Counted from the first letter of the stretch, positions 597 through 36,231 are shown. The stretch: 64,000 bases of DNA from Macrostomum lignano (GCA_002269645.1 NIVC01001996.1:1-64000), one strand, 5' to 3'. The notes: a model not told the origin generated them from the sequence alone. Numbers and translations: made by a program.

Positions 597-3500
597 GCAA
601 TCACTGCCGTGTTTCGGTACCTGGCCATGCTTCGAAAGCTTGGACCGCAAGAGTGGTTGTTCGAGGAAGCTCGCCTAGAAGGCCAAAAAGCCCTCGATGT
701 CGGTCTAAACGACTGGGAATACTATCCATTTGTTCGCAGCAATATCTGCCTTCAGCGATATCCGATGCAGGATCTGCTGAGAGCGCATCGAGTGCCGTGC
801 GACTACTCGCCAACAATAATATCCGACTTCTTGAATTTGCTGACTCCCGACAGATGCAAAGTGTACGTTTTCGAAGCTGGCGTCAACAAAAACTGTCCAA
901 GTAAGTGCTTGAGTTAATACGGTACAGAAATATTTTGCTAAGTATTCAGACTTGAAGGGAACAGATGAATGAAACAGCATGTTTTTTACAAACTAGGAAC
1001 TTTTAGCTTTTGTTTAAATCTTCATCTTTTTAGATAAAAAGGTTAATTTTGACACAGTTCACACGTACAATGTATGTTGAGTGATCATGTCGATAATTTC
1101 GTGAAAGTGCATCAGGCTGCACTATTTTCAAGCACAAATATTTGAAAGTATAGGTATTAAGAAATCTAAGCGTCCACGTCCCCTCAAAAGGCTTCTTTCT
1201 AAAATCATTCCTTATTATAGCGTAGACCAACGATCATATATACAGATCTATCAAAGATCTATGGCGTAGACTTGTAAAACTCTTCGCAAAAGCGTCTGCT
1301 TATCCGAATTTTTTTGCTAACGTCCATCTGTATGTAGCTGTCTATGGCCAGTCCTGCCCACACTCCGGCGCGGTGCCGCACAGCGTCAAGAAGCTGGATC
1401 CCGACCTGCTGGCAGTCTGTAAAGCCGATTGGCCTTCACCAAGCATTGAATTCGACGCTGATCTGGGCTTTCCTCAGCCAACGCCTGTGGATTGCTTAGT
1501 AAGCTGGGTGCTTGTCTGAGGACTGAGGACTGATGACTGAGAACTTTTCGTCGATTAGTTAAAGTTATATAGATCACTTGTAGTATTTTTATTCCTCCAA
1601 CATGTTTTTAGGCGGAGTCAGTGTCAATAAGTCAACAAGACGACAGTTCGGCATTGTCGCGCATTGCTCGCCGTCATGAAAAACTCCTAGCCTTGCCGTC
1701 ATCTGACTGCTCATTCCGCGTCATTGAGCTGACAAACGGTGTCCAAGCTATCCTGGCCAGTCGAAACAGTTTCGGAGGCCAGGAGAGTAACGAAAAATCG
1801 CTTGTGTGCACCACCCTGGGCATTGGGAGACTACACGATCCGACTGACTTTCGAGGCTTAGCAGAGCTGTGCCATCGCCTCACACTGGTTGGATCGAAAT
1901 CGACGCCTCAAACATTCGATGGCTTGAACGACCTGCTGCTAGACAATAGTTGTGAAGAGAATGTTGAATATGCCATGGGGGTACACGATGACCAATCAGT
2001 GTACAAGTTTACTGTTCCAGCGAGTCTAATTCCGGAAAGCCTGTTTCGCCTAGGCTGTGGATTGGTCAATCCCGAAATTAGCAACGAAAGCGTCGAACGC
2101 GAGCTGCTGTCTTGTCAGTTCAGGCGCCAGATTCCAGCCCAGGACTGGTTGGAGCGCTGCTCGGGAAATCTCACCCATCCCTACAATCGAATGGCGAAAG
2201 GTGCCCAGAAAACTATTCGATCCTACACATCCGAGGAACTAAAAACTCGCTTGATTGCATTTTTCAATGAAAACTACTCTGCGAACTTGTTGAAGCTGGC
2301 TATAGTGGACAGCAGGTCTCTTGACGAGTTGGAGGTTAGTTTGCGAGCCGTATAAAAAAATCCTATTGGAAGTAGGCACACTAATACTCGCAAGTTAATA
2401 ACGAAGCCTTCAGATATGCGTGGTTTAATAACTTTGTACTCATTGCAGAAACTGGTGGCAGCTCATTTTGGAAGCATGCGGAATTTGTCAATCAACCAGT
2501 TGAAGATTTCAACGCATCCGTACGAAGGAACATTGATGGGCGTAAAGGTAGGTGCTTCAGACTTTATGTGTGTATTTTTGTGTACGTTTAATAGCAGCAG
2601 ACAAGGAGTATAGACTCGCAAATTAGAATGTCACATTAGAGAGCGTTCTTCTTGTTCAGCTTACATTGGTTCCCCGACCAGAAGTAGAACCCGAGGACGC
2701 TCTAACCTATGAACTCCTGCCTAAAATTACACAATAGCTTACATTGGTTCCCGACCACAAAAGTAGAACCCGAGGACGCTCTAACCTATGAACCCCTGCC
2801 TAAAATTACACAATAGCTTACATTGGTTCCCGAACACAAAAGTAGAACCCGAGGACGCTCTAACCTATGAACCCTGCCTAAAATTACACAATAGCTTACA
2901 TTGGTTCCCGACCACAAAAGTAGAACCCGAGGACGCTCTAACCTATGAACCCCTGCCTAAAATTACACAATAGCTTACATTGGTTCCCGACCACAAAAGT
3001 AGAACCCGAGGACGCTCTAACCTATGAACCCCTGCCTAAAATTACACAATAGCTTACATTGGTTCCCGAACACAAAAGTAGAACCCGAGGACGCTCTAAC
3101 CTATGAACCCCTGCCTAAAATTACACAATACACTTAACTAATCTAGGTTCGCAGCAACTGTCTGAGTTTAGGTCGAAAACTTTACATGGTTTTCCCCTTG
3201 CCGGAGCAAACAAAACTGCACTTGACTTCGCCGGACATGCTCGTGAGCTACTTGATCAACAACCGGTGCAAGGGGAGCATTAGCGACTGTCTCGAGCGGC
3301 GTCATTTAAGTACAAACGTGTTTGGACAACTGGTCAACAGAGGTTCTGTAGGCTTCGACTCCTACTGCGTGACTGTTTTCCACCAGAATAAAGAGTTGGA
3401 GATGGCAGAGAGTGAGAACAAGGTGTGTACGAATAGCGATTTACATGCGTTTGTTGCGTATACATTGTTGCGTATATCACACGCTGTTCTTTCTAGAGAA

Positions 3501-6500
3501 GTCGTGCGTCCGACGCTCTCATGTCACTCACGACTTGAAGGTCGGGGTTCGATTCCCGATCATACTGGAACAATTTTTGTCCTTTAGCAAGACACTTAAC
3601 TCTGCATTGTTTCAAGTTCACCCAGCTGTAAAATGGGTGCCAGCATTAGGAGGAGCAATTAAGGGTGGTGTGTTGCGATCCCAAAGTTCTTGGACTGAAC
3701 AGCCGTACGCAGCCTTCAGATGCGCCGCCCCAAAGCTTCGGCTGAGCTGTCGGTTGCACATAGCCCAATTAGGGAAGGTTTAATGAATTATTATGTTTTT
3801 ATCCTCTTTAAGAAGAATCTGACTGTAAAAAAGTTTTCACAATGATCGACAACCTTCAATAAACTTCAATAAAAATCAGACGTACGCGTCTATTGGTTAA
3901 GATACCTTTAAAAAAATTTCACTATCGCAAGCTTTTAAGCTCATATTTTACAGACTCAGTAAAATACCACACTTATCTTCAGATAATCACAATAGTATTT
4001 CGCTATCTCGCAATGCTGCGCCAAATTGGTCCACTGGAGTGGCTCTACAACACTTTCCGCGTAGAAAGACGCAAGGGTCAGACATTTGACGACGAAAATT
4101 CTTCTACTGGGCCTCGTTGGAAGCTGAACCCGTTGCAGTACTACTGCGACCAGCTGCTAGAGTGCCACATGCAGCGCTACCCTCTGGAGAGCTTGTTCAC
4201 TGCTCGGTACGCGTTGCCTGAATACTCGCCTCGGGCCATTACTGACTTTCTGGAATTTTTGAAGCCCGATAATTGCAAGGTGTTCGTTTCAGGCTTTGGC
4301 ACAGACGAGTCTCATATGTGCACCTTTCTGTGTAAGTTGTCCTTTAATCTACAAAATGGTTACTAATTAAGTATCGGATAATTTAAAATCACTTATGACG
4401 TGATCTTCTTCGTTAGATTACTGATTATTCCATCCTTTCACCCGCAGCTCCTGATGGCAAGCTCTGCTGCGAGCCGGATGGCCCAAATTTCTGCAGTATG
4501 GAAAAGCTCAAACCGGAACTGATTGCCACCTGCTCAGCTGCTTGGCCTTCTTCATCGTGCGAGTTCGATACTGAGCTGAAGCTGCCAAAACAGAATCTGT
4601 TTTTGTGCTCCGATTTTAGTCTGAGGCCCGACGAGACAACTGATCAGGTCGGTATGGATTCCTAGCGGTGATGCGGTGGTCCAGATCTGTGTTAGGGTAG
4701 GTTAGGTTAGGGTAGTCGGATAGCTATAGTTCTAAGAGGGGCTTTTAGTGCTGCAGCTAATCAAGTCGACCGTTGAATCGCAGACAGAGTGGAAGCACAC
4801 GCTCACACATGGTGTACAATGCCTATGACTTCATGGCTGAATATGAATTGCAAGAATTGTACGGAGGAGTAGTTGTGTTATTGTGTCGACTTTTTTAAAT
4901 TTCAGCAACCACAAGGACCGCGGCTGCTACGATTCGAAGCCGGGCCGCACACACCAGCCGCTCGCTTCTGGTTCCAGCAGGATAACAGGCTCCAGACTCC
5001 GATTGTCTTCATCTCAGTCGATTTGGTGACTTCGCCTGAGCCGCTTGTGACCGACTGCGCCTCGTCCGTCATGCTGGATATTTTTGTCGTGCTCCTAGTC
5101 GACCAGCTCAACAGCCTTGAAAGCCAAGCCAAGCAGGTTGATCTACGTTTAAAAGTGTCGCGCAGCAAACAGGGCATTCAGGTGTGCTGCAGCGGCTACA
5201 GGCAGCCCCTGCCAAGTCTTGTGGCTGCCGCTCTGAGTCGGATTTTTGAGCTGAAGATTACGGAACATGCATTTCGTAAGGTGAGCTGTGCACAGTGTCT
5301 AACTAGAATTTTCCCGCCGACGAATATTTCCTGACGAGTTTGGCCTTGGGGATTCTTCTTAACTGCTCTGAACATATTTTTAAACGAGGCCAGCTGTTGA
5401 GGGGGCGCCAGCTACAGAGGGGGTGCCAGCAAACAGAGGGGACGTCAGCTACAGAGGGGACGCCAGCTACAGAGGGGACGCCAGCAAACAGAGGGGACGC
5501 CAGCTACAGAAGGGACGCCCAGCTACAGAGGGGGTGCCAGCTACAGAGGGGGTGCCAGCTACAGAGGGGGTGCCAGCTACAGAGGGGACGCCCAGCTACA
5601 GAGGGGGTGCCAGCTACAGAAGGGACGCCCAGCTACAGAGGGGGTGCCAGCTACAGAGGGGGCGCCAGCTACAGAGGGGGTGCCAGCTACAGAGGGGACG
5701 CCAGCTACAGAGGGGACGCCAGCTACAGAGGGGGTGCCAGCTACAGAGGGGACGCCAGCTACAGAGGGGACGTCAGCTAGAGAGGGGACGTCAGCTACAG
5801 AGGGGACGCCAGCTACAGAGGGGACGCCAGCAAACAGAGGGGACGCCAGCTACAGAGGGGACGCCCAGCTACAGAGGGGACGCCAGCTACAGAGGGGGTG
5901 CCAGCTACAGAGGGGACGCCAGCTACAGAGGGGGTGCCAGCTACAGAGGGGGCGCCAGCTACAGAGGGGGCGCCAGCTACAGAGGGGACGCCAGCTACAG
6001 AGGGGACGCCAGCTACAGAGGGGACGTCAGCTACAGAGGGGACGCCAGCAAACAGAGGGGACGCCAGCTACCGAAGGGACGCCCAGCTACAGAGGGGACG
6101 CCAGCTACAGAGGGGGTGCCAGCTACAGAGGGGGCGCCAGCTACAGAGGAGGTGCCAGCTACAGAGGGGACGCCAGCTACAGAGGGGGTGCCAGCTACAG
6201 AGGGGGTGCCAGCTACAGAGGGGGCGCCAGCTACAGAGGGGGCGCCAGCAAACAGAGGGGGCGCCAGCTACATTGGGATGCATTAATTGCCTACATGGAT
6301 CATCGGCTCAGCAAATATAAATTAATGGGTTATCAATCTCCTCATTGTTTCAGGCTCGACGGAAAATATCTGCCCTGGAGGCGCAGAAAACGCACAAAAC
6401 GGACTTGTGCAAGTCGCAGCTTGCTATGCTACTAAATAGCGCCTGCTCTTGGCACTGGTCGTATCAGGATAAAAGAGTCGCTATTAACGGTATGTTTGCT

Positions 6501-8224
6501 AATATCTAAATATTCAATACAAAAATTCCAGACGAACTCTCTTCTCTACAAACCTTCACTTCAGAAACAACTCTGGAGAGCTTCATGATATTTGTCCAGC
6601 GATTCAGCAGTCAGATTCAGCTATCGTCGCAACCGCAACGTCTGGTCAGCGAGGACGAGGACGAAGAGGACAAACGAACTGACGCGGCTGTTGCCGTCAT
6701 GAGCCTTTGGTCACGAATCTCCCTAGCCGAGGACGAAGAAGTCGTAGAGGAGAGCTCCGCGCTGCAGCAGACACTTCAGGAGGAGCAAGACCAGCAGCAG
6801 AAGCAGCAGATTCCGCGCCAACTGTTTGCCGAGATTCTCGTTTATGGCAACGCTACAGCTAAAGATGCTGAAGCAGCCAGTCAAATCATTTTGAACGCGC
6901 TGCCATCACCGACTCAGCGTACCACTGAGACAACATTTGAAGCAGTGAGGCGTCGAGTGTATCTACTCCCCAGCGGCAGCCATCACGTGCTTCAACTGAC
7001 AATATCTGCTAATTATCAGAGGAAATCAGGGTGCGCTGTAGTACTTCAGGTGCCAAAACCGGTGCCAACTGCCGACACAAATATGGGCTTTGAAGACGCG
7101 ATTAGACAAGACTGTTTGTTTTATCTGCTAATCGAGGTTTTGCAATGCCGCGGCGAGATGATCAATGACCCGTTGGATCGAGCTATAAAGATACTAATAC
7201 AGAGAAATTATCACGCCTATGTTGTTACATTTGACGTTGTGGATTCACAGCACCCGACAAAGGTAGGCCTATGTGTGAGAGTAGTGAATTAACAATGTCA
7301 CTGAACCGAAAAGGTAGGCCGATGTGTGAGAGTAGTGAATGAACAATGTCACTGAACCGAAAGGGTAGGCCGATGTGTGAGAGTAGTGAATTAACAATGT
7401 CACTGAACCGAAAAGGTAGGCCGATGTGTGAGAGTAGTGAATTAACAATGTCACTGAACCGAAAAGGTAGGCCGATGTGTGAGAGTAGTGAATGAACAAT
7501 GTCACTGGATCGAATCAGCTGCTTGTTTCCTATCGCTCTTTTTTCCAGATTGAAGAACAAGTGGAAAATTATATCGAAAAAATTGGCGATTACATTTCCT
7601 CTCTGTCAGAGGAGTCATTCCGATACTGCTTATCAAGCATGGAGAAATCGATGCGCAAAGAAATTCCTACTACTGTCCAGGAGCAGCACGATTCCCATTG
7701 GCGCAGCATCACTCACGGTGTGCTGCGCTTCGACCGGGACGCAAATTTGGCCAAGTGTTTAGACGCAGTGGTTGGAGGCATCAAGAAGGATTGTCTGCTT
7801 GAACTATGGCGGGTAAGTAGCAAAGTAGCAAAGTACCAATTTTTTACCAGCGTTTATCAGATTCAACTTGAACTTAAGTTGGAGCTTATATAATTAGTCT
7901 TGTATAATATATACCGTTCGCGCCGCTTCCAGTCCTGCTTAAAGCGGGGATCTCCGAACCGGCGCAAGCTGTGCATCCATCGAATCTCCAGGGCGGCTTT
8001 CCCCGACGGCATCAGCGAGGCTGACTACGCTGATTACCCGGTGAGTCCTGAAGCCATACGCACTTGTTGACTCTTGTAGCGTTGGATGCGTTCTCCTTAA
8101 TTAATTCTCTAAAAAACTCTATTTCCAGGGAACCATCATACGTAACAGAAATCTTTTCAAGCAAAGCCTGCTGCTAAGTCCCTTGCCATCGGTACAGAAT
8201 TTGCGTCCGAACTCTGATGTCTAA
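597..8224 (+). CDS. M16A (insulinase/nardilysin-like) pseudo-peptidase paralog A, 5'-truncated by the window edge; visible architecture D2-D1-D2-D3-D4
   Basis: Exons 597-900, 1338-1498, 1612-2334, 2449-2547, 3147-3422, 3983-4331, 4448-4647, 4906-5280, 6354-6489, 6532-7262, 7549-7812, 7933-8040, 8129-8224. All introns are GT-AG with compatible phases and no internal stop. IDE-like motifs recognised by eye: ELTNG..IL, LGIG..DP..F.GLA, HPY, YSANLLKL, FPLP, AVFRYL..LR..GP.EW, FWFQQD..L.TP, GYRQPLP, VYGN, HWRSI..GVLRFDRD, RRKLCIH. The zinc motif position reads ELCHR (1864-1878). Confidence 0.85.
2659..3129. repeat. Intronic tandem repeat, 78-79 bp unit, ~6 copies
   Basis: Unit CTTACATTGGTTCCCGACCACAAAAGTAGAACCCGAGGACGCTCTAACCTATGAACCCCTGCCTAAAATTACACAATAG; the AGTAGAAC word recurs at 2683, 2762, 2841, 2919, 2998, 3077. 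Confidence 0.95.
3515..3780 (+). mobile_element. tRNA-derived SINE family 1 (CORE/MIR-like central domain)
   Basis: B-box GGGGTTCGATTCCC, then CCTTTAGCAAGACACTTAACTC...CACCCAGCTGTAAAATGGG, which resembles the CORE-SINE domain. The tail TACGCAGCCTTCAGATGCGCC is shared with the other copies. Confidence 0.7.
5395..6272. repeat. Intronic minisatellite, 18-19 bp unit CCAGCTACAGAGGGG(A/G)(C/T)G
   Basis: Direct tandem reiteration inside intron 5281-6353 of paralog A; source of the ATEG/SYRG/QRG ORFs. Confidence 0.95.
7260..7506. repeat. Intronic 51-bp tandem repeat (~5 copies) that reiterates the 5' splice site
   Basis: AAG|GTAGGC recurs with the GT at 7263, 7314, 7365, 7416, 7467. Confidence 0.95.
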
Positions 8225-9469
8225 GCGAGACGCCATCGAGTTTCTTGGAATTTTGAATTTGCAGCAACAAATAAACTGGACTCAGTTCAACCTCAATAAA
8301 ATATCTGTAGTTATACACTTAATATTTACCGGTGAAAACATGCACGAACAACTTTGTCAATGTTTAATATGAGAATGGTTTTGCTCAAGAAAGCTCTGGT
8401 TTTCGGTTTCCCTTGGTGTACTTACTTGTGCAGAAGACTAGCAGAGACCAATTATCAGATGGTAAAAGAATAAACTCTATTTGTTCATTTTTACATAAAA
8501 TACGCTCGTAGCCTTCGTTCACGGTGTAAAATTATTTTGACGATTTTTTTTACAAATTTTGCTTTTTAAATCATTTTGTAACACAAAGATCCGTTAGAAG
8601 CTCCCCAGAAACGCCAGATCGTCAGTTAAAAAACTGAATTTAAGTATTCATGCTCATAACTAGCATCTGCAAAGTTATAGATACACAGATACTAGCATCG
8701 TAGATAGGACAGTACACCACATGTAGATGTAGAAGTGTTTGGTCTTACTCTAACGATCACCAAAGGAAAGGTTGTTAAATTTTTTGTTCTATAATGTTGC
8801 CGATCCTCGTGGACATAAAGAGATGAATAAACTCCTATGTCTGCGCCAACAGGTCAACTCAACAGTGTCCAATGCTCTTTGTCGTATGGGTATTAAACAA
8901 GCCAAGCAAAAACTAAAATAATAATGAAGCCAAACAGTAGCCTGTAGCTGTAGTACTCTTCTCTTGACTTAACTGAATCAACTGCTGTAGAGGACGCAAT
9001 GTGAAGATGAGAGCGAAAGGCGAAAGGTTGGCTTTCCTCGATTATTTTGTTGCTCCCTGTTTAGTGCTGTGAAGGCAGCAGGTAACAATTAAGGTAATTT
9101 GAGCGTAAATGCAAGGTTTAAATTTATTTTATTCTGAATACGTCATAAACTGCTGTTGAGCATGCAGCTCTAGTTCAAGAAAAAATCGGAGAGAAGTTTT
9201 CATTAGTCGCGTTATATCCTATCTAAACTGTACAAAGGTCTAGTTTAGTATTAGGTCAGTTTTGGTGATAGATGTTTAATAAATTCTGTTGAAGCTAAAA
9301 ATCAAAACTCAACATTCTCGATGTCTCCTAACCAACAAACATCTACTTGTGGTCCGAAGGGACAGCTAATACACTATTTTTTCACCTTGATATGATTGTC
9401 TATGGGCATAACTTGAAAAAACCGCATAGTCTTTCAATTCTTGCATAGCTTCAATTCTTAGAGCTCAAG

Positions 9470-12400
9470 ATGCAACAGAGCCTAAAGCTTCCACAGCAGC
9501 AGTCGCCATCCCAGTCCAAGCAGCCTGAATCGGTAAATCAGCGACCAAGTGTCACAATGTCCATAAAAGTTCGCGACAACAATGTACCCTTAGTAAAAGG
9601 AATCGAAGCTTACAAGCACACAAAACGACGATGCCTGGAGCTGTCGAACGGTGCCAGTGTTCTTCTTATTAGCTGGTCAAACTTGGAGCAGATTCAGGGC
9701 TTCTTCGATCCCTACAGCGTGTTTCTTTGCGTGAACCTCAACATTGGCCGGCTTCACGACCCACCCGATTGTGTAGGCCTTGCCGAGTTGTGCCAACGAC
9801 TGACGCTCTGCGGCTCCAAAAAATATCCGAACGACGAGCAGGCTGGTAAGTCAGTCAGTCCGTCTGAATCTGCTTGGCTAATTTCGCGGTGCGCTGTGGC
9901 TTTTTAAAATGGAACAGCATTTCAGCTACTAGCTGAAAGACCTAGTAGGGACGATTGACAATTCACCTGCACACCAAAATCTCGTTAACCGCTTGGTGAT
10001 CAGGATGCTAGCACACCACCGGTACAGTATACGATCGCTACTCGTACGACGTACACGTTGCTCTGGTGCATCTATAACTGGTTAAAATGCCACGACGATT
10101 GATGGTTCAAGTTATTGAATCACCCTAATCGCAGTCTGTGCAGCATAACGGCGCCAATTTAGGCCCTCAAGCAAGGCTGACTGCTGTATGGGGTTTGTAC
10201 GCTCTTAATTATAATAGGAATCATGATCGAAAGGACTGCAGTTATCATTATTTTATAAGAATTGATTGCACCTGTCCCGATTGGGCCGGTTGTGCAACTG
10301 ACAGCTCACCCGCAGCTATTGCGTGGCGCATCTGAAGGCTGCGTAATGGCTGTTTAGTCCAAGGACTGGGAGGTAGCCAGACACCCTCAATAACCCCAGC
10401 TAATGCTGGGTACCCATTTTACAGCTGGGCGAACTGAAGCAATGTAGAGTTAAGTGTCTTGCTCATTGCTCAAGGACACAAATTGTTCTAGTGGGATCTG
10501 GAATCGAACCCCCGGACCTTTCATTAGGGAGTCCAATGTTCTAACCACTAGGCTGCAATCCAGTTAACATTTAGTAATGTTAATAAACATTGTTTAGTAT
10601 AATATCCGTGTTTGTTTTGTACATTGTTCTGAAAAAAAAGTTTTGGTGTATAAGAGATCCCTAGGGAAATCAAAATTTGGTTCTTACTCAAGAAAAAAAT
10701 GCGAGTTGCTGACAAAAGTGCGCCTAATTTGCAGGTCTGCTCACGAAAGTTCAGAGAGAAAGCAGCTCATACTCAGAAGAGATCACAATCGGGCAGCCGC
10801 AACAAGAAAGCCATAGCAACTCAATATTGTCCGAATCATTCGATTTCGACCCGCTCGCTCGAATTGAGGTCACCGAGGATCAGACAATTTACACTTTTAC
10901 CCTGGAAACCAACTATCAGTTGGAGATGTTTCTGGACCATCTCTGCGCCGGGTTGCAGTGTCCGCTGTTTAACAAGACGGCAGTGGAGCGGCAGGTGCAA
11001 ATCTGGCAGGCAGTCTCTAAGACGAATGCGCCCTCCCTAATAGACCAGTTAGAGCACTGCTCGGGTGACGCCAAGCATCCCTACAACCGGCTGCACCGTC
11101 AAAGTGGCCGAACTGTTGATAAATTATCTACCGATGAGCTAATTAACCAACTGAAAGAATTTCACTCGAAAAACTATTCCGCTAATCTGTTGCGATTGGT
11201 GCTGTCGTATGCGAAGACACTGGACGAAATGGAGGTTGGTAAAAGTCGTTAATATGTGGTTGTAAAGATTACCATGGCTATAAATAACTTATGCACCAAA
11301 TACTCGAATTGACAGGCAATGGTGCTGGAGTCTCTGGGTGGAATGCAAAATTTATCGCTTCCACGTATTCGCTTTCCTCGTCACCCGTACGATGGTACGG
11401 AAATGGCAGTAAAGGTAAAATTGTGCCGTAAGCCTGAAGCCAATTCTTTCAAAGTATTTCAATTTTTATTGCGCCAAGAGACACAAAAAAGTTTATAAAA
11501 ATAAAATGGCAACACATTAAAATTCAGCCACAAGCAAAGCTAGCGTTTTAAGATAGGCGACTCATCATTAACCACTTATGTGGCCATAGAAACTAATGTG
11601 AAAATTTTGCTACTCGCGTCAGCGCAAAGATCAGCTACTAAACTCCATTTCGTCATTAGTTTCTGCAGTGCGTGCATCGTTATTAGTTTGATTGAGTAGC
11701 TTTTATTTAATTTATGAGAAACAGCTAGGGAAACAGGAGCAGAGACTTTTGCATAGTATTGGATTAAAATTTGACCTTTTTAGGACACCCATTATGCATT
11801 GGTGTGTTTGAGAAGCTTTAAATGCTGGCTAATCAATTTTACCCTTTTAAGTATGACGCACGTCAGTAAAACAGTTTCAAAGTCCAGTGTTTACTATCGA
11901 AATGTCTAATATTGCAACAGTACTTACGCTTGCAGAAGGTCTTGATTGTTTATTATTACACTAATTACAATATTTCAGATATAATTGGCCTTATGACACA
12001 TATTTAATTTTGCTAATTTTTACGTTTTCCCAGACATCGGAAGTCGTTTCCTTTTACGAGTATTTCATTTAAACCCAAAAACAGATGCAATGAAAAATTA
12101 AAGCAACAACATTAACCAAGTAATTATTCGAATAGAAAAGTTTTAATAGTACTACCAAATGTCGTTCAGAATGAATAATATTACTATTAAAAAGCCAAAT
12201 AATTGGCAAAGTTAAATCCGTGGGCTTTATTATATAATCTACGTGGTACTACTCACAAACATAATATATTAACGGTTTGATAGTACAATGTAGTAAAAAC
12301 TGTTTTACTGCCGTGTACAGCTGATTTATAAGAAAATCTAGTATAGCGTCTTTCTACGTGTTCTTCAGTCCTCTGTGCCCCCATGGCTACATGTACGCCA

Positions 12401-15400
12401 CCACCAACAAATTCTACGAGAAAAGGTGATAAGACTTTGAAAACCTATCAACTCATTCTGTAGGTTCGCATCAAAGGTAAATCTCTCGGTGGAATTTACA
12501 TTGTGTTCGCACTGCCAGACCAGTCTACTAAGTATCTGTCGTCGCCAGATTTATTCTTAACCTTTCTGATGCACGTTGACGAGCGCGGCGGGTTGCAAGA
12601 CTGTCTGCAGAGATTCGGACTGGGCTATTGTCAGTGCCGACTGTTGCCTAGCGGCAATCTAGGCTTTGATTCGTACTGCATCGCCATCAAAGGCATGTGT
12701 AAAGTTCGCGATGCGGAGAACAGAGTGAGTAGATCTATATGTGCTCAGATTATATAAAGATTGGTCAAAATGCATATTAAATAGTCTCGCTGTAGAACGG
12801 AGAGGTGAACTTAGGTACGCGGAGTGGGGCTCAAAGTAGAGCTCGAATCACTGTGGAAATCTTACCAGACCAGTTCGGGACACTCGGCAGGGTTTCATGG
12901 TAGGAAGTTTATCAGACACATCACGAACTGGCTGGGACACTTACGAACAACTATGCGCTATCGTGAAAGGGGTTGTCTTGCGATTCAGAGCCATGAGGCT
13001 AACCCCCAAGGCACAGAACGTGTACAAAACCTGACAAATAAAATGTCAGGGCCGATGTACACCCTGTGTGAGCGCGTTTATGAGTTCCCAGTGCCTGCTT
13101 ACAGTATTGGTGCGCTTGTGTGGGCCCAGGAGTCTGCAGAGTGGGCTGAATTGCTAAACGGCTGGTTGTAGGACGATGTAGCCAAACGCGTTGCACCATA
13201 ATTAATGAATAATTAACAATAAATATACGCACTTGTTTGTGAGCTGTGTAATGAATCAATACTAGACTTACAAGTCTTATAAATTTTCATGTACACCTGC
13301 CATATTTAGCGCTCCATTTGCCAACACGCAGGCAATTACAGCAGTGTTCCGCTACCTGGCCTTACTGCGCGCCGTTGGCATTAACGAGCTTCAACGCAGA
13401 GAAATTTGTAAAACGCACGAATTGACTTATAATCCATTTAGTTTGACCGAGTTCGGTCCGCCGCCCGAGTGCCTGCCGCGGCGCATGCAGCGATATCCGC
13501 TCAGAGACCTGCTGGTAGCTCGTTTTAAAATGTCAAACACCGGGTCCGGCGTGCTCGTGGAATTTCTTAGTAGCTTATCACCGGATCGCTGCAAAGTTTT
13601 TGTTTCCGATACCAATGCCAGCAATAGGGAAGGTGCAACCAGTCAGTGTAAGTGTGCATTTTTACCCAGTGAACCAACACACTTTACCAGCGTAATATTT
13701 TGCCATTACAGTTTGGAAGTGACAAAAACGATTTGAAAAACGTTGGCCATATATATAATACTTCAGTTGGTTGATCAGATGTTGTCAGCACTTATTTTAG
13801 CGCCGCAGGCACTCATTTTGGCGCGGCGGGCACTCATTTTAGCGCCGCGAGCACTCATTTTGGCGCCGCAGGCACTCATTTTGGCGCCGCAAGCACTCAT
13901 TTTGGCGCCGCAAGCACTCATTTTGGCGCCGCGGGCACTCACTTTAGCGCCGCAAGCACTCATTTTTGCGCCGCGGACAATCATTTTGGCGCCCCAGGCT
14001 CTAATTTAAGCACCATGCAGCAAAATTTCCAAAACGGGTCACAAGGTATGGTGGGGGGGGGGGCAAAGCATTGGCATGTCCCCCCCCCCAAATATTTTAC
14101 TGGTGCCCCTGTCCCCCCGTTGGCGACGCCCCTGCCCCCCTGCCCTTCATCTCACCCCACCCCCAACTAGAGATCAAAAGCTTTGTAATACATCGGTATT
14201 GACGCAAAAGTAGAGTACTTTATAATAAATATCAATATACTGTAAATAGTCGTAAACAAAGTAGACATAAATATATAAATGATGTCAAGACACAAAAATG
14301 GAGTCAGAACACAGATTTTGGGGGACGCAAAGAGGTATATTTACGTGGGCATAAATAATAAAGAAAAAAAGGGTAAAATTTAAAAGCAACGAAGAATACA
14401 CTGCAAAAACTTTTTTACTTTTTTTACAAAGGGTTTAAGCGTATTCGGCCAAGTACTATTAGGTTAGCTTCTTGCCACATAACTAAGTTTAGGTTTTCAC
14501 GAGCGTGAATGACAGAATCATAAGGCCAGTTGAAGTGTCAGTTATCGATAGTATCATTTTTTTTCACAGCCCCAGACAGCAGCAAGCCGGGAGAGCGCGT
14601 CAAGTTTACAGTGGAGAAAATTCCATCGGAGCTCCTGTCGGCTTGGGCCGCCAGCTGGCCGTCGAAGTCGGAGTTCGATGCCGACTTTATTCTGACACCG
14701 ATCGGTCCCAATCCGACGCTGCCTCGTCCGCATCGATTTTTGCCCTGGAAAATTCCCTCGGAGGTGAGTGCGAGTTTAGCAATGAAAAATGTCTTGCTGG
14801 AAATTTTTATGCTGCCATAAATAAAATTAATAGACACATCGATTAGCAGAAGGATCGTGTTCATCCTAACGCAACGCCTTCGGCGACATCGTCTCACACC
14901 CAAGTCTGCCCATTTCGCTGACTCCTGGGTCACACAGGGTTTACATCGGTTCTAACTTTCCAATCTACAACACTCTCTGGGCCTTAAGTTAATGCGAGTC
15001 GCATACGAGCGTAAAAACCTCCCCAGCCAATTTTCGTGTGCACAATCCCTTATTTAATGTGGCGTTCGGGAATGGGACGTGTTTACACTCTGCTCTCATT
15101 TATAATTACGTGTATACTATGATATCTTAAGTAAGATGCCTCTTTAAAGTCGCTCATAATAATCCGTTTCTCTACCCTACAGTTCTCTACTATTCGATCA
15201 GAGTCTTCAACGTTGATAAAATCTCGTTGCAACGATCTCGGGGCACCGGTGTCGCTCGAATACGCTACGACAAGGTGCAACTGCTTGGAGTTAACGAACG
15301 GCGCCCAAGCCATTCTGCTGCACAGCGAAGGTCTTGAAAATAAATCATTCGTCTGCGTCAGCCTTGGCGTCGGTCGGTTGAACGACCCACCGGACTGTGC

Positions 15401-18400
15401 GGGACTGGCTCAGCTGTGCCAGCGCCTGACTCTGCTTGAGTCGAAGAAGTATCCAAACATAACCGAGTGCTTGCACAATCTTCTCTATATAAACAGCTAT
15501 CAAGGGTCGCCGTACTACGCGACGAGCGTTTCCGACGACCAGACAACTTACCGGTTCGAAATCGACAATTCATTCTTACATGAAAGTCTAGACCGACTTA
15601 GTGCGGGTATCCTGAGCCCTGAATTTACCGAGTCTAGTCTTACCCGTGAGCAACATCAGAACTTCTACAGTTGCAAGATTTCTGCCTTGGATTGCCTACA
15701 GCGCAGCTCGGGAAATTCAACTCATCCGATCAATCACCTGATACAGGGCAGTAATAAGACCGTGGGTTTGCTTGAGTTCAAAGAGCTGCACAAGCATCTA
15801 ACTAGCTTTCATTCGCGGTACTACAGCGCTAATCTGCTGCGTGTAGCAGTGTCTAGCAGCCACAGCATGGAAGACATGGAGGCAAGAGATCATTTTTATG
15901 TCACTTTTTTAATTGAGTCAGGGGTGCTAAACAAACAGTTTAATGTTTCAACAGGCAATGGTTCTCACAGCATTCGGTGGAATGCCGAATCTGTCAGTAT
16001 CGCCGCTGTCCTGCTATACTCACCCGTTCGAGGGCTCTAAGTTGGGCGTCAAGGTAAGCTTTATCTCTCTCATGGTCTCAATTGTCAGGACCACTAGAAA
16101 TTGTGTCGTATCAGAATTTAGCACTCGCCGTCTATGAAAAAATCTAATTGAAGGCTAAATTTCGCTCCAAATTTGCGATCGCGTAATATCGATCGTAGGA
16201 GGTAAGAAGTTGTCGGATAAGTGATTAAAGACTATAGAACGTAACTGCTACGTCCTGATGCAAACTAAGCTTCTGGTGGTCATTAAATATTTTTACAGGG
16301 CTTATAAATAATAACTTTGCATTACCTAACTTGTCCAGATTCGAGGAAAGTCATTAAGCCTCGGCGGAGCGCTGCACGTCGTGTTTCCTCTGCCCGACCA
16401 GACGGAGTTGTACAAAACCTCACCCGATCTGTACGTTAGTTACTTTCTCAACAGTGACTGCGGCGGCAGTTTAAACGCCTGTCAGGATCAGCTCAATATT
16501 GCAACAGTATCCGCCGGGATGCAGAACTCCGGTTCGCTAGGATTCGATTCGTATTGTGTGACAGTGTTATTATCGAATACTACTGATCTAAGTAAAGCTG
16601 ATCTGATTAAAACTGAGAACAATGTGAGTACTTTATAAACAGAGCAGGATTCTTTACAAAAAACAAGTTAGTCGGGCCTTTGGACACTGCCGAAAATAAA
16701 GGTGGCAGTCTCTCTAGCCATGACAGATGAAGGCAGTGCAGGTAAAGGCCGGTTCACATTACCACTAGTTGCTATGCTGGTCAAAGATTGCCCAAACCAA
16801 CAATGCACAGTCGATTCAGGTTCATTTAAAAAATAAATTTGAGCAATATTTTGTCCCCAGAGTTACTGACGTTACTGCGAATTGGTCTTCTTATAATATC
16901 GTAACTTTGAATTTCTTTCGTTCTTCGGACGTCTAATACTTGAGCTTATAACTTATTTTGCTTTTTAGATGTGTAGATAGACACTTTCAACAATTTTCAC
17001 CTGTCAGACCATTTTAAAATCTGTAATAAATACTCGTGCTATTGCTAGCTATATTTTATTGATGTCAACGTGGACGAATCTCAACATTTTTAGGCAATAA
17101 CAGCCGTATTCCGGTACCTAACAATGCTGCGACAGCTGGAGCCTCGGGAGTGTCTGTTCAACATGGTCCGTCTTGCTCAAAGAAGGCTGTTCAATTTCGA
17201 CCGCGAAGGCGAGTGCATGGCGCCGGGCAGTGAAAAACTCGACCCGTTGCAGCGGTTCTGCGATGAGTCGCTGCAGGTGCATTTGCAACGGTATCCAGTT
17301 AAGGAGCTGCTTACTGCTAGAAGTGGCGCCAAGCTTGAATACTCGGCACAGGATATCGCGGCATTCCTTCGCTTGCTTGTTCCAACCAACTGCAAGATTT
17401 TCGTCTCCGATTTTGGAGCAGATGCCGATCACGAGTGCTCGTTGTTAAGTGAGAATTATTTCTGTTTCTTATGGTGTATTTTTACCGCAGCACCGATCTG
17501 CTCATTTTTCCTGGTGTGATAAACGCAAGGGCGTTGCCAGAATTCTTCTTTGGGAGGCTGAGTCGTCTGGGGGCTTTAGCACCAAGGGCTTTAGCTCCAG
17601 GGGCTTTAGCACTAGGGGCGCCAGCACCAGGGGCGCCAGCACCAGGGGCGCCAGTACCAGGGGCGCCAGCACCAGGGGCGCCAGCACCAGGGGCGCCAGT
17701 ACCAGGGGCGCCAGCACCAGGGGCGCCAGTACCAGGGGCGCCAGCACCAGGGGCGGCAGCACCAGTGTGTAAAGTACATTGCCATAAAAAATCCGTCGTA
17801 TTTTCGTCCGTCACTCCCCAGCACCTGGCGGCAGTCTCTGCTGCAAGCCGAAGAAGGCAAACGAGCTGCACACGCTGGAAAAGCTGCCATCGGATCTTCT
17901 CACCGCCTGCTCAGCCAGCTGGCCAACTGCCTCCATCATGGCGGACACTTTGATCAAGCCGCCAAGGGAAAACTTGTTTATCAGTGCCGATTTTCAACTT
18001 AAATCGAGAGAGAAAAAATTTGAGGTATTCAATAATCTTTATTTATGTTTTACTATGCTTCTGCAAGGGAAACTAGCAAGTAGGTAGTGGTTTGTCGTGC
18101 AACCAGGGCCAGATCCTGATCCAGATCCTACCAGACAAAATCAAGTAGAAATCTCTGTGTATTAGTTCAGTACATGTACCTTGATTATGTGCTATTTGAT
18201 ATCTTTGCACTCAAAGCAGTCTTGTTTAGATCATAGTTTCTAAGAAACCAAAGAGACGGCAGTCCTTGCTCCTTTCCACGTCTAATTTTAGTCGTCCGGT
18301 CCTCAGCAGCTGCTGATCAAACAGTTTCCCAACGGCACCAGCATTTCTGGTGCTCGACTCTGGTTCTGTCAGGACGGCCTGCAGTCGTTCAAAACTCCTC

Positions 18401-24400: not shown

Positions 24401-24994
24401 AGATATGTCAACTCAATATGAACGCAATGGAGTCGGAGTTGGGCGTAGTTCAGACAGACTCGATCACATAGCTCGTAGACTTCATCATTGTGTGACCACA
24501 TTTTTTTCATTTGGTTGACAAATCTCATGTTCTTAGGATCTGTGCTACCGACTTTTTAAACTCGGTTGGCAATCTATTTTTACGCTCTGGATAAGATAAA
24601 TGCACGTCAACTATATCCATCAGGTCCCTTAAGTCGTTATATTTGCTAACTTCAAGCTCGCTAGTCTCAATGTTTTAATTCCAGAAATTTTTAAAACCTG
24701 AATCGCCTGAACGTCGAAAACTGTCAATTCACAAGGAGTCGAAATTGAAGTTCGACGGAGCAACGGAAAACTTTTACTCCAAATACCAGGTGCGGATTTT
24801 TATAAAAATCGCACACTGAATTGATGACATATCACAAACACTAAATGAATAGCTTTGAGTTTTCGATCTTGATTTTTCTGTCTTTCTCAAAATTTCAGGG
24901 CAAGACGATTAAAAATCTGTTGGAGTTTCGTCAGAGCCTGAAGCAGTGCCCTCCAGTACCGTCTGAAATTCTCGACTGCGTTCACGAACTTTGA
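9470..24994 (+). CDS. M16A (insulinase/nardilysin-like) pseudo-peptidase paralog B, 17 exons, 1650 aa; architecture D1-D2-D1-D2-D3-D4
   Basis: Exons 9470-9845, 10735-11234, 11316-11414, 12464-12724, 13332-13647, 14570-14763, 15183-15881, 15955-16053, 16339-16623, 17094-17448, 17822-18024, 18292-18678, 20024-20162, 21997-22565, 23537-23806, 24685-24789, 24899-24994. Total 4953 nt, one open frame ending in TGA. One GC donor (15882). Intron positions and phases match paralog A. The zinc motif positions read ELCQR (9785-9799) and QLCQR (15411-15425). No hydrophobic signal peptide at the N-terminus. Confidence 0.85.
10262..10562 (-). mobile_element. tRNA-derived SINE family 1, near full length
   Basis: Reverse complement reads GCAGCCTAGTGGTTAGAAC (A-box) ... 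GGGGTTCGATTCCA (B-box) ... CCTTGAGCAA..GACACTTAACTC..CCCAGCTGTAAATGGG ... TACGCAGCCTTCAGATGCGCC. Confidence 0.75.
12975..13110 (+). mobile_element. SINE family 2 body fragment
   Basis: ATGAGGCTAACCCCCAAGGCA...GTCAGGGCCGATGTACACCCTGTGTGAGCG aligns by eye with the copies at 21625-21860 and 60790-61054 (minus). Confidence 0.55.
13790..13995. repeat. Intronic minisatellite, 21-bp unit GCACTCATTTTGGCGCCGC(A/G)(G/A)
   Basis: About 10 direct copies (ILAPQAL ORF), followed by a G/C-run-rich segment at 14040-14165. Confidence 0.9.
17575..17765. repeat. Intronic minisatellite, 15-bp unit CCAGCACCAGGGGCG
   Basis: About 12 direct copies inside intron 17449-17821. Confidence 0.9.
19045..19640. repeat. 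Intronic minisatellite, 43-bp unit
   Basis: GTTGCTACAGGTGGAGAGGATGCTCAAGCCGTGGGAGAAGTGA, about 14 copies. Confidence 0.95.
20335..20430 (-). mobile_element. SINE family 1 internal fragment abutting the 19-bp array
   Basis: CCAGCCAATGCTGGCACCCATTTTACAGCTGGGTGAACTGAAGCAATGCAG is the reverse complement of the CORE-like segment of the 36673 copy. Confidence 0.7.
20431..21575. repeat. Intronic minisatellite, 19-bp unit CTAGGCTACAACC(C/G/T)CAACA, ~60 copies
   Basis: Direct tandem array with a few variant positions. Confidence 0.97.
21625..21860 (+). mobile_element. tRNA-derived SINE family 2
   Basis: GTCCGACTCTCGCACCACACGATCCCCTTGGTTCGATTC (tRNA-like head with B-box), then AAAGTCATGGCTGCTGTACACCTTGTATGAGCG and CCCCCCTGTG; collinear with 60790-61054 (minus). 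Confidence 0.6.
22676..23350. repeat. Intronic minisatellite, 15-bp unit GGATGCCAGCATCAA, ~45 invariant copies
   Basis: No variant unit seen; the array gives the DASIK/QGCQH/MPASR/MLASL ORFs. Confidence 0.98.
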
Positions 24995-29878: not shown

Positions 29879-30251
29879 TCATTTACTTTTAGCCAAGTGA
29901 ACTGTCGGTAAAGCACTACAGGAAATAAACTGGGCATTGTTTTCTTCATATTATAGAAACTATTACTTTTTGACTAAAGCAGCGATTTTTTAACTCGCGA
30001 AGATGTTACATTTTTTATTTACAACTTTAGTATAGTTTATTTTTATAATTTTAAACTATCGTACAATAGATTTAGACAAGAAAACAAGAAAATCACTTAA
30101 CAACAAAATGAACCGTTAGGATTCGTTGATACTATTATAGTCAAGCATATTACCGAAATTTCAACGAGAAAATGATACTATAGTTTATCTGTGTTGAAAA
30201 TAGGTAAAACAAAACAGTTATTAATAGGTGAGTCTTATGTCTTATATAATT

Positions 30252-31012: not shown

Positions 31013-31043
<31 letters not shown>

Positions 31044-33106: not shown

Positions 33107-36231
<3,125 letters not shown>

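What the first reader, a model, noticed from the sequence alone, without database searches (positions are those of the whole stretch)
1864..15425. HXXEH replaced by a conserved (E/Q)LC(H/Q)R motif in all three visible catalytic domains
Seen: GLA-ELCHR-LTL (1864), GLA-ELCQR-LTL (9785), GLA-QLCQR-LTL (15411). The distal Zn-ligand Glu (IDE EVNAVDSEH) is also absent in each (ELLSCQFR, QVQIWQAV, EQHQNFYS). The domains are otherwise highly diverged, yet the replacement motif, GRL(H/N)DP, HP(Y/I)N, YSANLL and GFDSYC are kept and frames are open. Established: HXXEH is required for M16 catalysis, and inactive M16 subunits exist (MPP-alpha, UQCRC1/2). Inference: a selected non-catalytic pseudo-peptidase family, e.g. 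a peptide trap, chaperone or scaffold.
Basis: partly seen in the sequence, partly recalled or inferred. Interest (0 to 1): 0.72.

Follow-up and report, generated by a model that had tools for sequence, protein, structure and literature searches.

The report
Dead insulin-degrading-enzyme copies in flatworm testis
Two neighbouring genes of the flatworm Macrostomum lignano encode very large relatives of insulin-degrading enzyme that have lost every residue needed to cut peptides, yet are kept intact by selection and are switched on in the testis, so they are non-cutting "pseudo-enzymes" of unknown role in sperm formation.

Summary
The three motifs sit exactly where stated and align to the HXXEH zinc site of insulin-degrading enzyme (IDE, peptidase family M16A). 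All three zinc ligands and the catalytic glutamate are replaced, and the Arg/Tyr pair of domain 4 is also gone.

The three domains belong to two tandem genes of Macrostomum lignano, not three. Each gene encodes about 1,650 residues. An N-terminal half-IDE (domains 1-2 plus hinge) is spliced in frame to a complete four-domain IDE-like unit. My exon models match the database proteins PAA53923.1 and A0A1I8JA03 without gaps.

The family has at least five paralogue clusters, all from M. lignano and all with degenerate motifs. It is monophyletic and probably sister to the worm's own intact IDE. The reading frames are open. In a divergent haplotype block, non-synonymous divergence is about ten times lower than intron divergence. 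Published tables class gene B transcripts as testis- and germline-specific.

The best reading is a selected, lineage-specific pseudopeptidase family of the male germline. Loss of catalysis is well supported. A binding or scaffold role is inference. I rate it a new variant of a known kind, of moderate interest.

The parts
597..8224 (+). Gene A (Mlig028065-type), 3' 76% of the gene. The first ~391 codons, including the first pseudo-site ELCLR, lie upstream of the window.
   Evidence: Exon model from paralogue homology plus GT/AG sites. The 1,262 encoded residues equal P0002 residues 392-1653, with 15 substitutions and no gaps.
597..900 (+). Gene A exon: end of domain 2 of the half unit (AITAVFRYLAMLR...)
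1338..1498 (+). Gene A exon: hinge of the half unit. It ends in phase 0 at a GTAAGC donor.
1499..1611 (+). 113-bp intron joining the half unit to the full unit of gene A in frame
   Evidence: GTAAGC...TTTTAG, with phase 0 on both sides. The junction ...PVDCL|AESVSIS... is present in P0002.
1612..2334 (+). Gene A exon: domain 1 of the full unit. There is no in-frame ATG before the domain.
   Evidence: Pfam PF00675, 26.2 bits; rat IDE E = 8e-12
1864..1878 (+). Pseudo-active site ELCHR, in place of HFCEH
2092..2130 (+). VERELLSCQFRRQ: E182 kept; the distal zinc ligand E189 is replaced by Q
2449..2547 (+). Gene A exon
3147..3422 (+). Gene A exon (domain 2, GFDSYC)
3983..4331 (+). Gene A exon (domain 2 end, IITIVFRYLAMLR; start of Pfam M16_M)
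4448..4647 (+). Gene A exon (hinge)
4906..5280 (+). Gene A exon (domain 3)
6354..6489 (+). Gene A exon (domain 3)
6565..7262 (+). Gene A exon (acidic/Q-rich insert and domain 4). The region 7128-7214 stands where the R/Y pair motif LRTKEQLGY should be.
7549..7812 (+). Gene A exon (domain 4)
7933..8040 (+). Gene A exon
8129..8224 (+). Gene A last exon with stop codon
9470..24994 (+). Gene B (Mlig000040-type), complete: 17 exons, 1,650 codons
   Evidence: The protein equals P0001 (PAA53923.1) apart from 5 substitutions. The same gene lies at 10001-26524 of L001, NIVC01002999.1.
9470..9845 (+). Gene B exon 1: ATG and first part of domain 1 of the half unit
9785..9799 (+). Pseudo-active site ELCQR
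10735..11234 (+). Gene B exon 2: rest of domain 1 of the half unit. At 10983-11027, VERQVQIWQAVSKTN has E182 replaced by Q and E189 replaced by V.
11316..11414 (+). Gene B exon 3
12464..12724 (+). Gene B exon 4 (GFDSYC)
13332..13647 (+). Gene B exon 5 (AITAVFRYLALLR)
14570..14763 (+). Gene B exon 6: hinge of the half unit. It ends in phase 0 at a GTGAGT donor.
14764..15182 (+). 419-bp intron joining the half unit to the full unit of gene B in frame
   Evidence: The junction ...WKIPSE|FSTIRSE... is present in P0001.
15183..15881 (+). Gene B exon 7: domain 1 of the full unit. It has no in-frame ATG and ends at a GC donor (GCAAGA).
   Evidence: Pfam PF00675, 47 bits; human IDE E = 3e-22; donor seen
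15411..15425 (+). Pseudo-active site QLCQR
15639..15677 (+). LTREQHQNFYSCK: E182 kept; a 6-residue deletion removes the position of E189
15955..16053 (+). Gene B exon 8
16339..16623 (+). Gene B exon 9 (GFDSYC)
17094..17448 (+). Gene B exon 10 (AITAVFRYLTMLR)
17822..18024 (+). Gene B exon 11 (hinge)
18292..18678 (+). Gene B exon 12 (domain 3)
20024..20162 (+). Gene B exon 13
21997..22565 (+). Gene B exon 14 (Q-rich insert and domain 4). The region 22425-22514 stands where the R/Y motif should be.
23537..23806 (+). Gene B exon 15
24685..24789 (+). Gene B exon 16
24899..24994 (+). Gene B last exon with stop codon

Best explanation
The window comes from the free-living flatworm Macrostomum lignano. 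It holds two tandem genes: gene A, cut by the window start, and gene B, complete. Both descend from the worm's own insulin-degrading enzyme.

Architecture. Each gene encodes about 1,650 residues with six M16 domains. A half unit (domain 1, domain 2, hinge) is spliced in frame to a full unit (domains 1-4). The half unit probably arose by internal duplication of the exons for the N-terminal half. The whole gene was then duplicated in tandem.

Loss of catalysis. Every domain 1 has lost both zinc-binding histidines, the distal zinc-binding glutamate and the catalytic glutamate. The full units have also lost the Arg/Tyr pair of domain 4. The proteins therefore cannot work as zinc peptidases. These points are shown at the sequence level.

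Retention and expression. The genes are nevertheless transcribed, expressed in the testis and germline, and held under purifying selection. These points are also shown.

Inferred mechanism. They probably keep the clamshell fold of IDE and act in the male germ line by binding rather than cutting. They could hold peptides or proteins inside or against the shell, or serve as a scaffold. This parallels catalytically dead IDE, which still binds substrates, and wild-type IDE, which has non-proteolytic chaperone-like activity. The extra half shell gives a third module that could cap the chamber or link molecules.
For: Homology and site loss:
- Pfam M16 scores above cut-off. PDB alignments to IDE have E = 3e-22, 8e-12 and 2e-7, and H108, E111, H112 and E189 are replaced.
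- A census of eight family units against canonical IDEs shows the same four invariant residues lost in all units. The LRTKEQLGY motif is absent from all full units.

Architecture:
- The half-to-full splices are in phase.
- The full units have no ATG.
- My models equal P0001 and P0002 without gaps.
- Three paralogous genes (A, B and C = P0164) share the spacing of two D1 domains about 540 residues apart. No other protein in the sample does.

Origin:
- All five best clusters are from M. lignano.
- Family monophyly has 100% bootstrap support.
- The intact M. lignano IDE, P0010, is the closest canonical relative.

Selection:
- There are no stops or frameshifts in 1,650 plus 1,262 codons, although dS between paralogues is saturated.
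- In the divergent haplotype block, dN = 0.0030 against 0.033 in introns, Fisher p = 3e-14.

Expression:
- The GenBank models derive from RNA-seq assemblies (PMC5730564).
- Mlig000040.g2/g3/g9 are classed 'Testis' and 'germline_FACS', with read counts of 6 in the head fragment against 724 in the fragment that also holds the testes (PMC7336406).
- RNA1509_2920, a 5,511-nt full-length transcript, is in the germline candidate list (PMC5173321).

Binding without cutting is documented for IDE itself (PMC4521159).
Against: - No binding partner, localisation or phenotype is known. The germline screen did no in situ hybridisation or RNAi for these clusters.
- The C-terminal half is so diverged that HMMER barely aligns it to IDE. 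The one structure prediction was unusable, with pLDDT 45. Retention of a closed chamber is therefore assumed, not shown.
- dN/dS within the haplotype block is 0.38 but not significant on its own, with 5 against 4 changes. Synonymous divergence is also below intron divergence, so part of the exon conservation may not be protein-level selection.
- The link between the testis-specific 'Maclig_37v3@Mlig000040' transcripts and this gene rests on the shared cluster name and on matching CDS length (4,953 nt = 1,650 codons plus stop), not on sequence.
- Expression of gene A is not directly documented.
Confidence: 0.65

Rival explanations
1. The dead copies are regulatory partners of the worm's active IDE. 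IDE works as a dimer with cross-talk between subunits. A catalytically dead paralogue, or its extra half shell, could pair with IDE or with another M16 half. It would then modulate or block that enzyme in the testis, much as the inactive alpha subunit completes mitochondrial processing peptidase.
For: M. lignano keeps an intact IDE, P0010. Inactive M16 halves that are essential partners of active ones are the best-known M16 pseudopeptidases (PMC11266112; PMC12731061). The second histidine is replaced by arginine in most units, as in alpha-MPP (HxxDR).
Against: The units share only 24-29% identity with the worm's IDE, so conservation of an interface is unproven. Nothing is known of co-expression. 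The full units already carry their own C-terminal half. No glycine-rich loop of the alpha-MPP kind was seen in the sequences I read, but I ran no formal search for one.
Confidence: 0.15
2. The half unit and the full unit are separate proteins, and the six-domain ORF is an artefact of transcript assembly. M. lignano has polycistronic precursors resolved by trans-splicing.
For: About 7% of assembled M. lignano transcripts are precursors encoding two or more proteins (PMC5730564). Some GenBank models of the same clusters are shorter, at 1,357 and 1,272 residues.
Against: Both junctions are canonical cis-introns in phase 0 with no stop. The full units have no initiator ATG in their first exon. The same architecture is kept in three paralogues at about 40% identity. 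A de novo transcript of 5,511 nt is annotated 5UTR_CDS_3UTR. The shorter gene A models coincide with 1-bp indels in the GenBank contig.
Confidence: 0.07
3. The proteins are still peptidases that use other residues or another metal. For example, E and H in ELCHR, or the conserved cysteines, might take over.
For: Bovine core I, with a modified motif (YFVEH), shows low activity after detergent treatment (PMC12731061). A preprint reports amyloid-beta degradation by E111Q IDE. The family has extra conserved Cys residues near the site, in PDC and LC.
Against: The residues at the four catalytic positions differ between paralogues: E/Q/R, H/Q/L/N/A and R/E/G. No replacement site is therefore conserved. 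The distal Glu and the R/Y pair are gone too, as are other invariant residues of domain 1.
Confidence: 0.05
4. They are decaying pseudogenes with no function.
For: Catalytic residues are lost and divergence is fast. The GenBank contig has two 1-bp indels in gene A exons.
Against: The frames in the window are intact over 2,912 codons despite saturated dS between copies. Splice sites and intron phases are conserved. dN is far below intron divergence. The genes are transcribed abundantly and tissue-specifically.
Confidence: 0.03

Closest known systems
Insulin-degrading enzyme (insulysin, M16A); structures such as 2G47 and 3TUV; M. lignano's own copy PAA70440.1
   Same: It is the best PDB match for every domain-1 exon. 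It shares the order of domains 1-4, the M16_M hinge and structural motifs such as G.L.DP, HP..., YS.NL and the Cys inside the motif. The worm's IDE is the nearest canonical relative.
   Different: The zinc ligands, the catalytic Glu and the R/Y pair are all missing. An extra N-terminal half unit is present. The C-terminal half is far more diverged. Expression is testis-specific.
Alpha subunit of mitochondrial processing peptidase (PMPCA/Mas2) and cytochrome bc1 core proteins (M16B)
   Same: These are naturally inactive M16 modules kept by selection. Alpha-MPP has HxxDR, with the second His replaced by Arg as in most units here. Yeast core I lacks the motif.
   Different: They are two-domain M16B proteins that work as obligate partners in defined mitochondrial complexes. 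Here a whole M16A enzyme, both halves, is dead. The proteins show no obvious mitochondrial presequence, they are lineage-specific, and their nearest relatives are IDEs.
Dinoponera quadriceps (ant) LOC106741566, XP_014469183.1
   Same: It is an IDE-like protein with two domain-1 modules and degenerate motifs (HLCQH and HLCQR). It ranked third in the exhaustive search.
   Different: It has two complete four-domain units (D1 domains about 940 residues apart) rather than half plus full. The first His is kept. It is an independent origin, forming a separate clade with 100% bootstrap. It may be a merged gene prediction; I did not check.
Laboratory IDE-E111Q and non-proteolytic IDE activities
   Same: E111Q is the exact substitution found in two of the three visible sites. 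The mutant is the form in many deposited IDE structures, and the PDB sequence aligned carries Q at that position. That it is used there to hold substrates rests on my own knowledge. IDE also blocks alpha-synuclein fibril formation without proteolysis (PMC4521159).
   Different: The laboratory mutant keeps its zinc and the rest of the cleft. Here the ligands are also gone.
Cryptosporidium insulinase-like protease (INS) family
   Same: It is a lineage-specific expansion of IDE-like genes with diverse sequences (22 genes; PMC8074150 abstract).
   Different: It is a protist parasite family. The two members studied in that paper carry the zinc-binding motif. No half-plus-full architecture is reported there. 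I did not examine it here.

Membership tests
Peptidase family M16, subfamily M16A (IDE/pitrilysin type), as homologues | Significant match to the M16 N-terminal domain (PF00675) | tested here: met
   47.0 and 26.2 bits against a cut-off of 22.3 for the two undivided D1 exons. The split exons of copy 2 score 19.6 and 18.5. The IDE E-values are 3e-22, 8e-12 and 2e-7.
Peptidase family M16, subfamily M16A (IDE/pitrilysin type), as homologues | A single chain of about 1,000 residues with four homologous domains and the M16_M middle region | tested here: met
tblastn and phmmer place domains 1-4 in IDE order. PF16187, PF00675 and PF05193 are precomputed for P0001 and P0002. An extra half unit precedes the full unit.
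M16 peptidases, as active enzymes | HXXEH zinc-binding and catalytic motif in domain 1 | tested here: not met
   The motifs are ELCHR, ELCQR and QLCQR in the window. Those of the other family units are ELCLR, QLCNE, RLCQR, ELCAE and ELLAG.
M16 peptidases, as active enzymes | Distal glutamate zinc ligand (IDE E189) | tested here: not met
   It is Q, V or deleted. The column is a gap in seven of the eight units and R in the eighth.
M16 peptidases, as active enzymes | Arg/Tyr pair in domain 4 (LRTKEQLGY in IDE) | tested here: not met
   No unit has the motif in a MAFFT alignment with nine canonical sequences. The alignment of this diverged region is approximate.
M16 peptidases, as active enzymes | Metal-dependent peptide hydrolysis | not testable with these tools
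   This needs recombinant protein.
M16B-type pseudopeptidase partners (alpha-MPP, bc1 core proteins) | Two-domain subunit that pairs with an active or structural partner in a mitochondrial complex; glycine-rich loop in alpha-MPP | tested here: not met
   The proteins have six domains and are nearest to M16A IDE. I did not see a glycine-rich loop in the sequences I read. Partner binding cannot be tested here.
Pseudoenzyme (pseudopeptidase) in the general sense | Homologue of an enzyme that lacks catalytic residues yet is expressed and under selection | tested here: met
   The catalytic residues are lost. The genes are expressed. They are under constraint.

The most novel reading that the evidence does not exclude
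The half-plus-full, six-domain layout is a new kind of M16 assembly. Three half shells sit in one chain, with all catalytic machinery removed. The assembly would work in flatworm spermatogenesis as a non-degrading cage or clamp for a specific peptide or protein cargo, for example holding sperm proteins or peptides until release. In that case an IDE fold would have been converted from a protease into a dedicated binding machine and then amplified in tandem under reproductive selection.
Probability: 0.2. Interest if true: 0.65.

Novelty: new variant of a known kind. Interest (0 to 1): 0.45.

Why it matters
The pseudopeptidase review I consulted (PMC11266112) lists only the alpha subunit of the mitochondrial processing peptidase for family M16. 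The M16 review (PMC12731061) adds the bc1 core proteins. A whole IDE-type enzyme that has been disabled, enlarged by an extra half shell, multiplied in tandem and confined to the testis would be a natural experiment on what the IDE clamshell can do without cutting. That question is debated for human IDE, whose non-proteolytic and chaperone-like roles are under discussion.

It also adds a clear case to the pattern of fast-evolving, lineage-specific reproductive genes in Macrostomum. RNA interference and transgenesis are available in this animal, so the function can be tested directly.

Tried and rejected
- The word-indexed protein search with the D1 exon found nothing. With the full protein it found only P0001, P0002 and three weak IDEs, so it was of little use for this diverged family.
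I therefore used a profile of single-exon D1 translations.
- dN/dS between paralogous units could not be estimated. dS was saturated or undefined, and dN was 0.59-0.77. I replaced it with a window-versus-GenBank haplotype comparison.
- phmmer of the domain-4 exon against PDB gave no hit even at E = 10.
- AlphaFold2 of the single-unit paralogue P0006 with a six-sequence alignment gave pLDDT 45 and pTM 0.31. This is too poor to use, so I ran no fold search and draw no structural claim from it.
- The Rfam and tRNA scans of the window were empty.
- Literature searches for Macrostomum with IDE or M16 terms, and for the gene identifiers, found no paper on these genes. One supplement held no entry.
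All residue assignments cited come from the PDB alignments.
- I considered and rejected an apicomplexan or other protist origin. The window holds fibrinogen-related, TSP1/EGF and ankyrin genes, and the database match to M. lignano is near-identical.

Full report
**1. What is in the sequence**

The window is eukaryotic. ORFs are short, introns carry GT/AG ends and many are filled with minisatellites, and G+C is about 44%.

GLAELCHR is at 1855-1878, GLAELCQR at 9776-9799 and GLAQLCQR at 15402-15425. GRL(H/N)DP, HP(Y/I)N, YSANLL and GFDSYC each occur once per copy. No genuine HXXEH lies in the region.

Pfam assigns the exons to Peptidase_M16 and Peptidase_M16_M. phmmer against all PDB sequences returns insulin-degrading enzyme (IDE) first for each domain-1 exon, with E = 3e-22, 8e-12 and 2e-7.

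In those alignments the motif lies on IDE GLSHFCEHMLFLGTKKYP. The substitutions are as follows.

| IDE residue | Copy 1 (gene A, full unit) | Copy 2 (gene B, half unit) | Copy 3 (gene B, full unit) |
|---|---|---|---|
| H108 | E | E | Q |
| E111 | H | Q | Q |
| H112 | R | R | R |
| E189 (distal ligand) | Q | V | within a six-residue deletion |

The repetition is due to paralogy, with BLAST E-values down to 1e-50 between copies.

**2. Gene structure: two genes, not three**

Comparing all + strand reading-frame segments with each other showed that the units alternate between half and full.

- A fragment homologous to the end of domain 2 and the hinge (597-1498) precedes copy 1.
- Copy 2 stops after its hinge exon (14570-14763), just before copy 3.
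- Both hinge exons end in phase 0 at good donors (GTAAGC, GTGAGT).
- Both following domain-1 exons start in phase 0 after a polypyrimidine tract and AG. Neither has an in-frame ATG before the domain.

I built exon models from homology and splice signals. Intron positions are the same in half and full units. One intron of gene B has a GC donor. All minisatellites fall in introns.

The models read without a stop: 1,262 codons for the part of gene A inside the window and 1,650 for gene B.

**3. Relatives and identity of the organism**

The word-indexed protein search failed, and the exhaustive search does not accept spliced sequences. I therefore searched 1.84 billion representatives with a profile of the single-exon domain-1 translations.

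- The two best hits (E = 1.5e-229 and 9.8e-151) are proteins of 1,650 and 1,653 residues from Macrostomum lignano. They are PAA53923.1 (BOX15_Mlig000040g5) and UniRef A0A1I8JA03 (Mlig028065 cluster).
- Gene B of the window differs from the first by five substitutions. The gene A part differs from residues 392-1653 of the second by fifteen substitutions. There are no gaps, and both half-to-full junctions are included.
- The GenBank annotation of this genome is derived from RNA-seq based transcript assemblies (PMC5730564).
- A third gene, C (P0164, 1,602 residues; Mlig021631/Mlig015450), has the same half-plus-full layout. In GenBank it lies on the same contigs as genes A and B, with the accession number just before theirs.
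- Among the 171 proteins fetched by then (the 150 listed hits, cluster members of the first six and the hits), only these three M. lignano genes have two domain-1 modules about 540 residues apart.

**4. Extent of the loss**

Aligning all domain-1 hits to the profile gave the following motifs.

| Unit | Motif |
|---|---|
| Gene A, half unit (upstream of the window) | ELCLR |
| Gene A, full unit | ELCHR |
| Gene B, half unit | ELCQR |
| Gene B, full unit | QLCQR |
| Gene C, half unit | QLCNE |
| Gene C, full unit | RLCQR |
| Single-unit paralogue P0004 | ELCAE |
| Single-unit paralogue P0006 | ELLAG |

Nearly all other hits carry H[FLY]xEH.

I also compared eight family units with eight canonical IDE-like proteins column by column. 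The residues invariant in the canonical set but lost in the family include H108, E111, H112 and E189, and other conserved positions of domain 1.

In domain 4, canonical sequences carry LRTKEQLGY, the R/Y pair that the M16 review describes as catalytically important (PMC12731061). No family unit has it. The alignment there is approximate, because this half is very diverged.

The whole catalytic apparatus is therefore missing, not just one motif.

**5. Origin**

In a neighbour-joining tree of N-terminal halves, the eight M. lignano units form one clade with 100% bootstrap support. The full units of genes A and B pair at 97-100%. The half units branch near the base, unresolved.

M. lignano also has a canonical IDE, P0010 (PAA70440.1, named insulin-degrading enzyme in UniRef). 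Its GLAHFCEH, EREVQAVHSEH and LRTKQQLGY are all intact. It is the closest canonical relative of every unit (24-29% identity against 18-25% for others) and sister to the family at 69% bootstrap.

The simplest history has four steps, all inferred from parsimony on these trees and motifs:

1. The worm lineage's IDE was duplicated.
2. One loss of catalysis followed.
3. The exons for the N-terminal half were duplicated internally.
4. The gene was then duplicated in tandem.

An ant protein with two complete IDE-like units and motifs HLCQH and HLCQR is an independent case.

**6. Selection**

Frames that stay open over thousands of codons at that divergence already argue against decay.

For a direct test I fetched the GenBank locus of P0001 (L001, NIVC01002999.1) and compared it with the window.

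- The two sequences are identical over gene A and the 3' part of gene B.
- They differ in a block from about 11.4 to 17.8 kb.
- In that block, introns outside tandem repeats show 94 mismatches in 2,823 aligned bases (3.3%).
- Exons show 9 mismatches in 2,209 bases: four synonymous and five non-synonymous.
- This gives dN = 0.0030 and dS = 0.0077. dN against intron divergence gives Fisher p = 3e-14.
- dN/dS = 0.38 is not significant alone. dS is also below the intron rate (p = 6e-4), which I cannot fully explain.

**7. Expression**

Three published sources bear on expression.

- In the re-annotation tables of PMC7336406, Maclig_37v3@Mlig000040.g2, g3 and g9 are classed 'Testis' in the positional data set. 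Their lengths are 4,953, 4,974 and 4,887 nt; 4,953 nt equals 1,650 codons plus stop. For g2 the read counts are 6 in the head fragment, 724 in the fragment that adds the testes, then 876 and 592. They are also classed 'germline_FACS' and linked to transcript RNA1509_2920.
- In PMC5173321, RNA1509_2920 is 5,511 nt, is annotated 5UTR_CDS_3UTR and is named as an IDE homologue. It is in the list of germline candidate genes, with log2 fold changes of 6.6 against juveniles and -4.9 against cut heads.
- A second IDE-like cluster in the same list (RNA1509_6123, 5,108 nt) behaves alike. Neither was tested by in situ hybridisation or RNAi.

The link to the window's gene rests on cluster name and length, not on sequence.

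**8. How it most likely works**

Shown: the proteins are IDE homologues that cannot bind the catalytic zinc in the known way. They lack the general base and the R/Y pair. They are transcribed, germline- and testis-enriched, and constrained.

Inferred: they act by binding.

- IDE with E111Q is the form in many deposited structures, and I recall that it is used there to hold substrates.
- IDE itself has non-proteolytic, chaperone-like activity (PMC4521159).
- The most conserved block in all units is not the former active site. It is the end of domain 2 and the hinge: FRYL..LR, QRYP, RCKV and WP.
- The extra half shell could cap the chamber, pair with another molecule, or pair with the worm's IDE.

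I could not test any of this. The only structure prediction was of too low confidence to use.

**9. Comparison with what is known, and novelty**

By descent these are members of family M16A. By the features that define an active M16 peptidase they fail on every one tested.

The known M16 pseudopeptidases are two-domain M16B subunits: alpha-MPP with HxxDR, and the bc1 core proteins. A recent review of metallopeptidase pseudoenzymes lists only MPP for M16 (PMC11266112).

I found no paper on these flatworm genes. The databases call them uncharacterised or name them by domain.

I therefore rate the finding as a new variant of a known kind. It is a fully disabled, enlarged, tandemly amplified IDE-type pseudopeptidase specific to the testis. 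Interest is moderate (0.45): solid and testable in a tractable animal, but pseudo-proteases in reproduction are a familiar theme and the function is still open.

Noticed in passing
window 2658-3130, 5399-6272, 7254-7514, 13788-14007, 17570-17765, 19040-19641, 20431-21583, 22653-23350: Every long intron of the two genes holds a minisatellite, with periods of 15-79 bp and up to 60 copies. Several differ in length between the window and the GenBank contig; for example, intron 13648-14569 is 922 bp here and 1,686 bp there. Some give long spurious ORFs.
   Followed up: partly
window 11400-17800 versus L001 12000-19300: The similarity to GenBank contig NIVC01002999.1 is mosaic. The two are identical over gene A and the 3' part of gene B, but introns diverge by 3-4% in the middle of gene B. 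This could be recombinant haplotypes, homeologous copies of this polyploid genome, or a chimeric assembly.
   Followed up: partly
L001 2046-2767 and 7050-7746 (window 1612-2334 and 6565-7262): The GenBank contig has a 1-bp indel in each of two gene A exons that are intact in the window. This probably explains the truncated GenBank models of Mlig028065 (1,272 and 1,263 residues). It may be an assembly error or a broken copy.
   Followed up: partly
window 15882-15954: This is a 73-bp intron with a GC donor (GAG|GCAAGA) in gene B. The two paralogous units carry GT donors at the same position.
   Followed up: yes
window 26266-28254 (+): A single 662-codon ORF, low in complexity and rich in Q, P and S, has no Pfam match. 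The GenBank contig has a called gene of 623 residues at the matching place (L001 27891-29762).
   Followed up: partly
window 29349-29786 (+): An exon encodes part of a fibrinogen C-terminal (fibrinogen-related) domain, with Pfam E = 1.7e-16.
   Followed up: no
window 30250-36190: A tandem duplication of about 2.6-2.9 kb of CT-rich, microsatellite-laden sequence is 88% identical between copies and has very strong GC and AT skew. It gives long Ser/Leu-rich ORFs that are probably not coding.
   Followed up: partly
window 37678-40160 (-): Exons on the minus strand carry EGF-like and thrombospondin type 1 signatures at weak Pfam scores. They probably belong to an extracellular matrix or adhesion gene.
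   Followed up: no
window 44167-53742 (+): A large ankyrin-repeat gene has many exons. Each intron is filled with a different 21-23 bp minisatellite.
   Followed up: no
P0003 (XP_014469183.1, Dinoponera quadriceps): This ant protein of 1,835 residues holds two complete IDE-like units with motifs HLCQH and HLCQR. It is an independent case of fused, probably inactive IDE copies, or a merged gene prediction. Other sporadic degenerate motifs occur among the top hits: P0042 RLCEH, P0077 HLVQH, P0086 NLCKK and P0125 NLLGH.
   Followed up: partly
PMC5173321, Figure 3-source data 1: The germline candidate list mentions 'insulin-degrading' eleven times. More IDE-like clusters than the two I read may therefore be germline-enriched in M. 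lignano.
   Followed up: no
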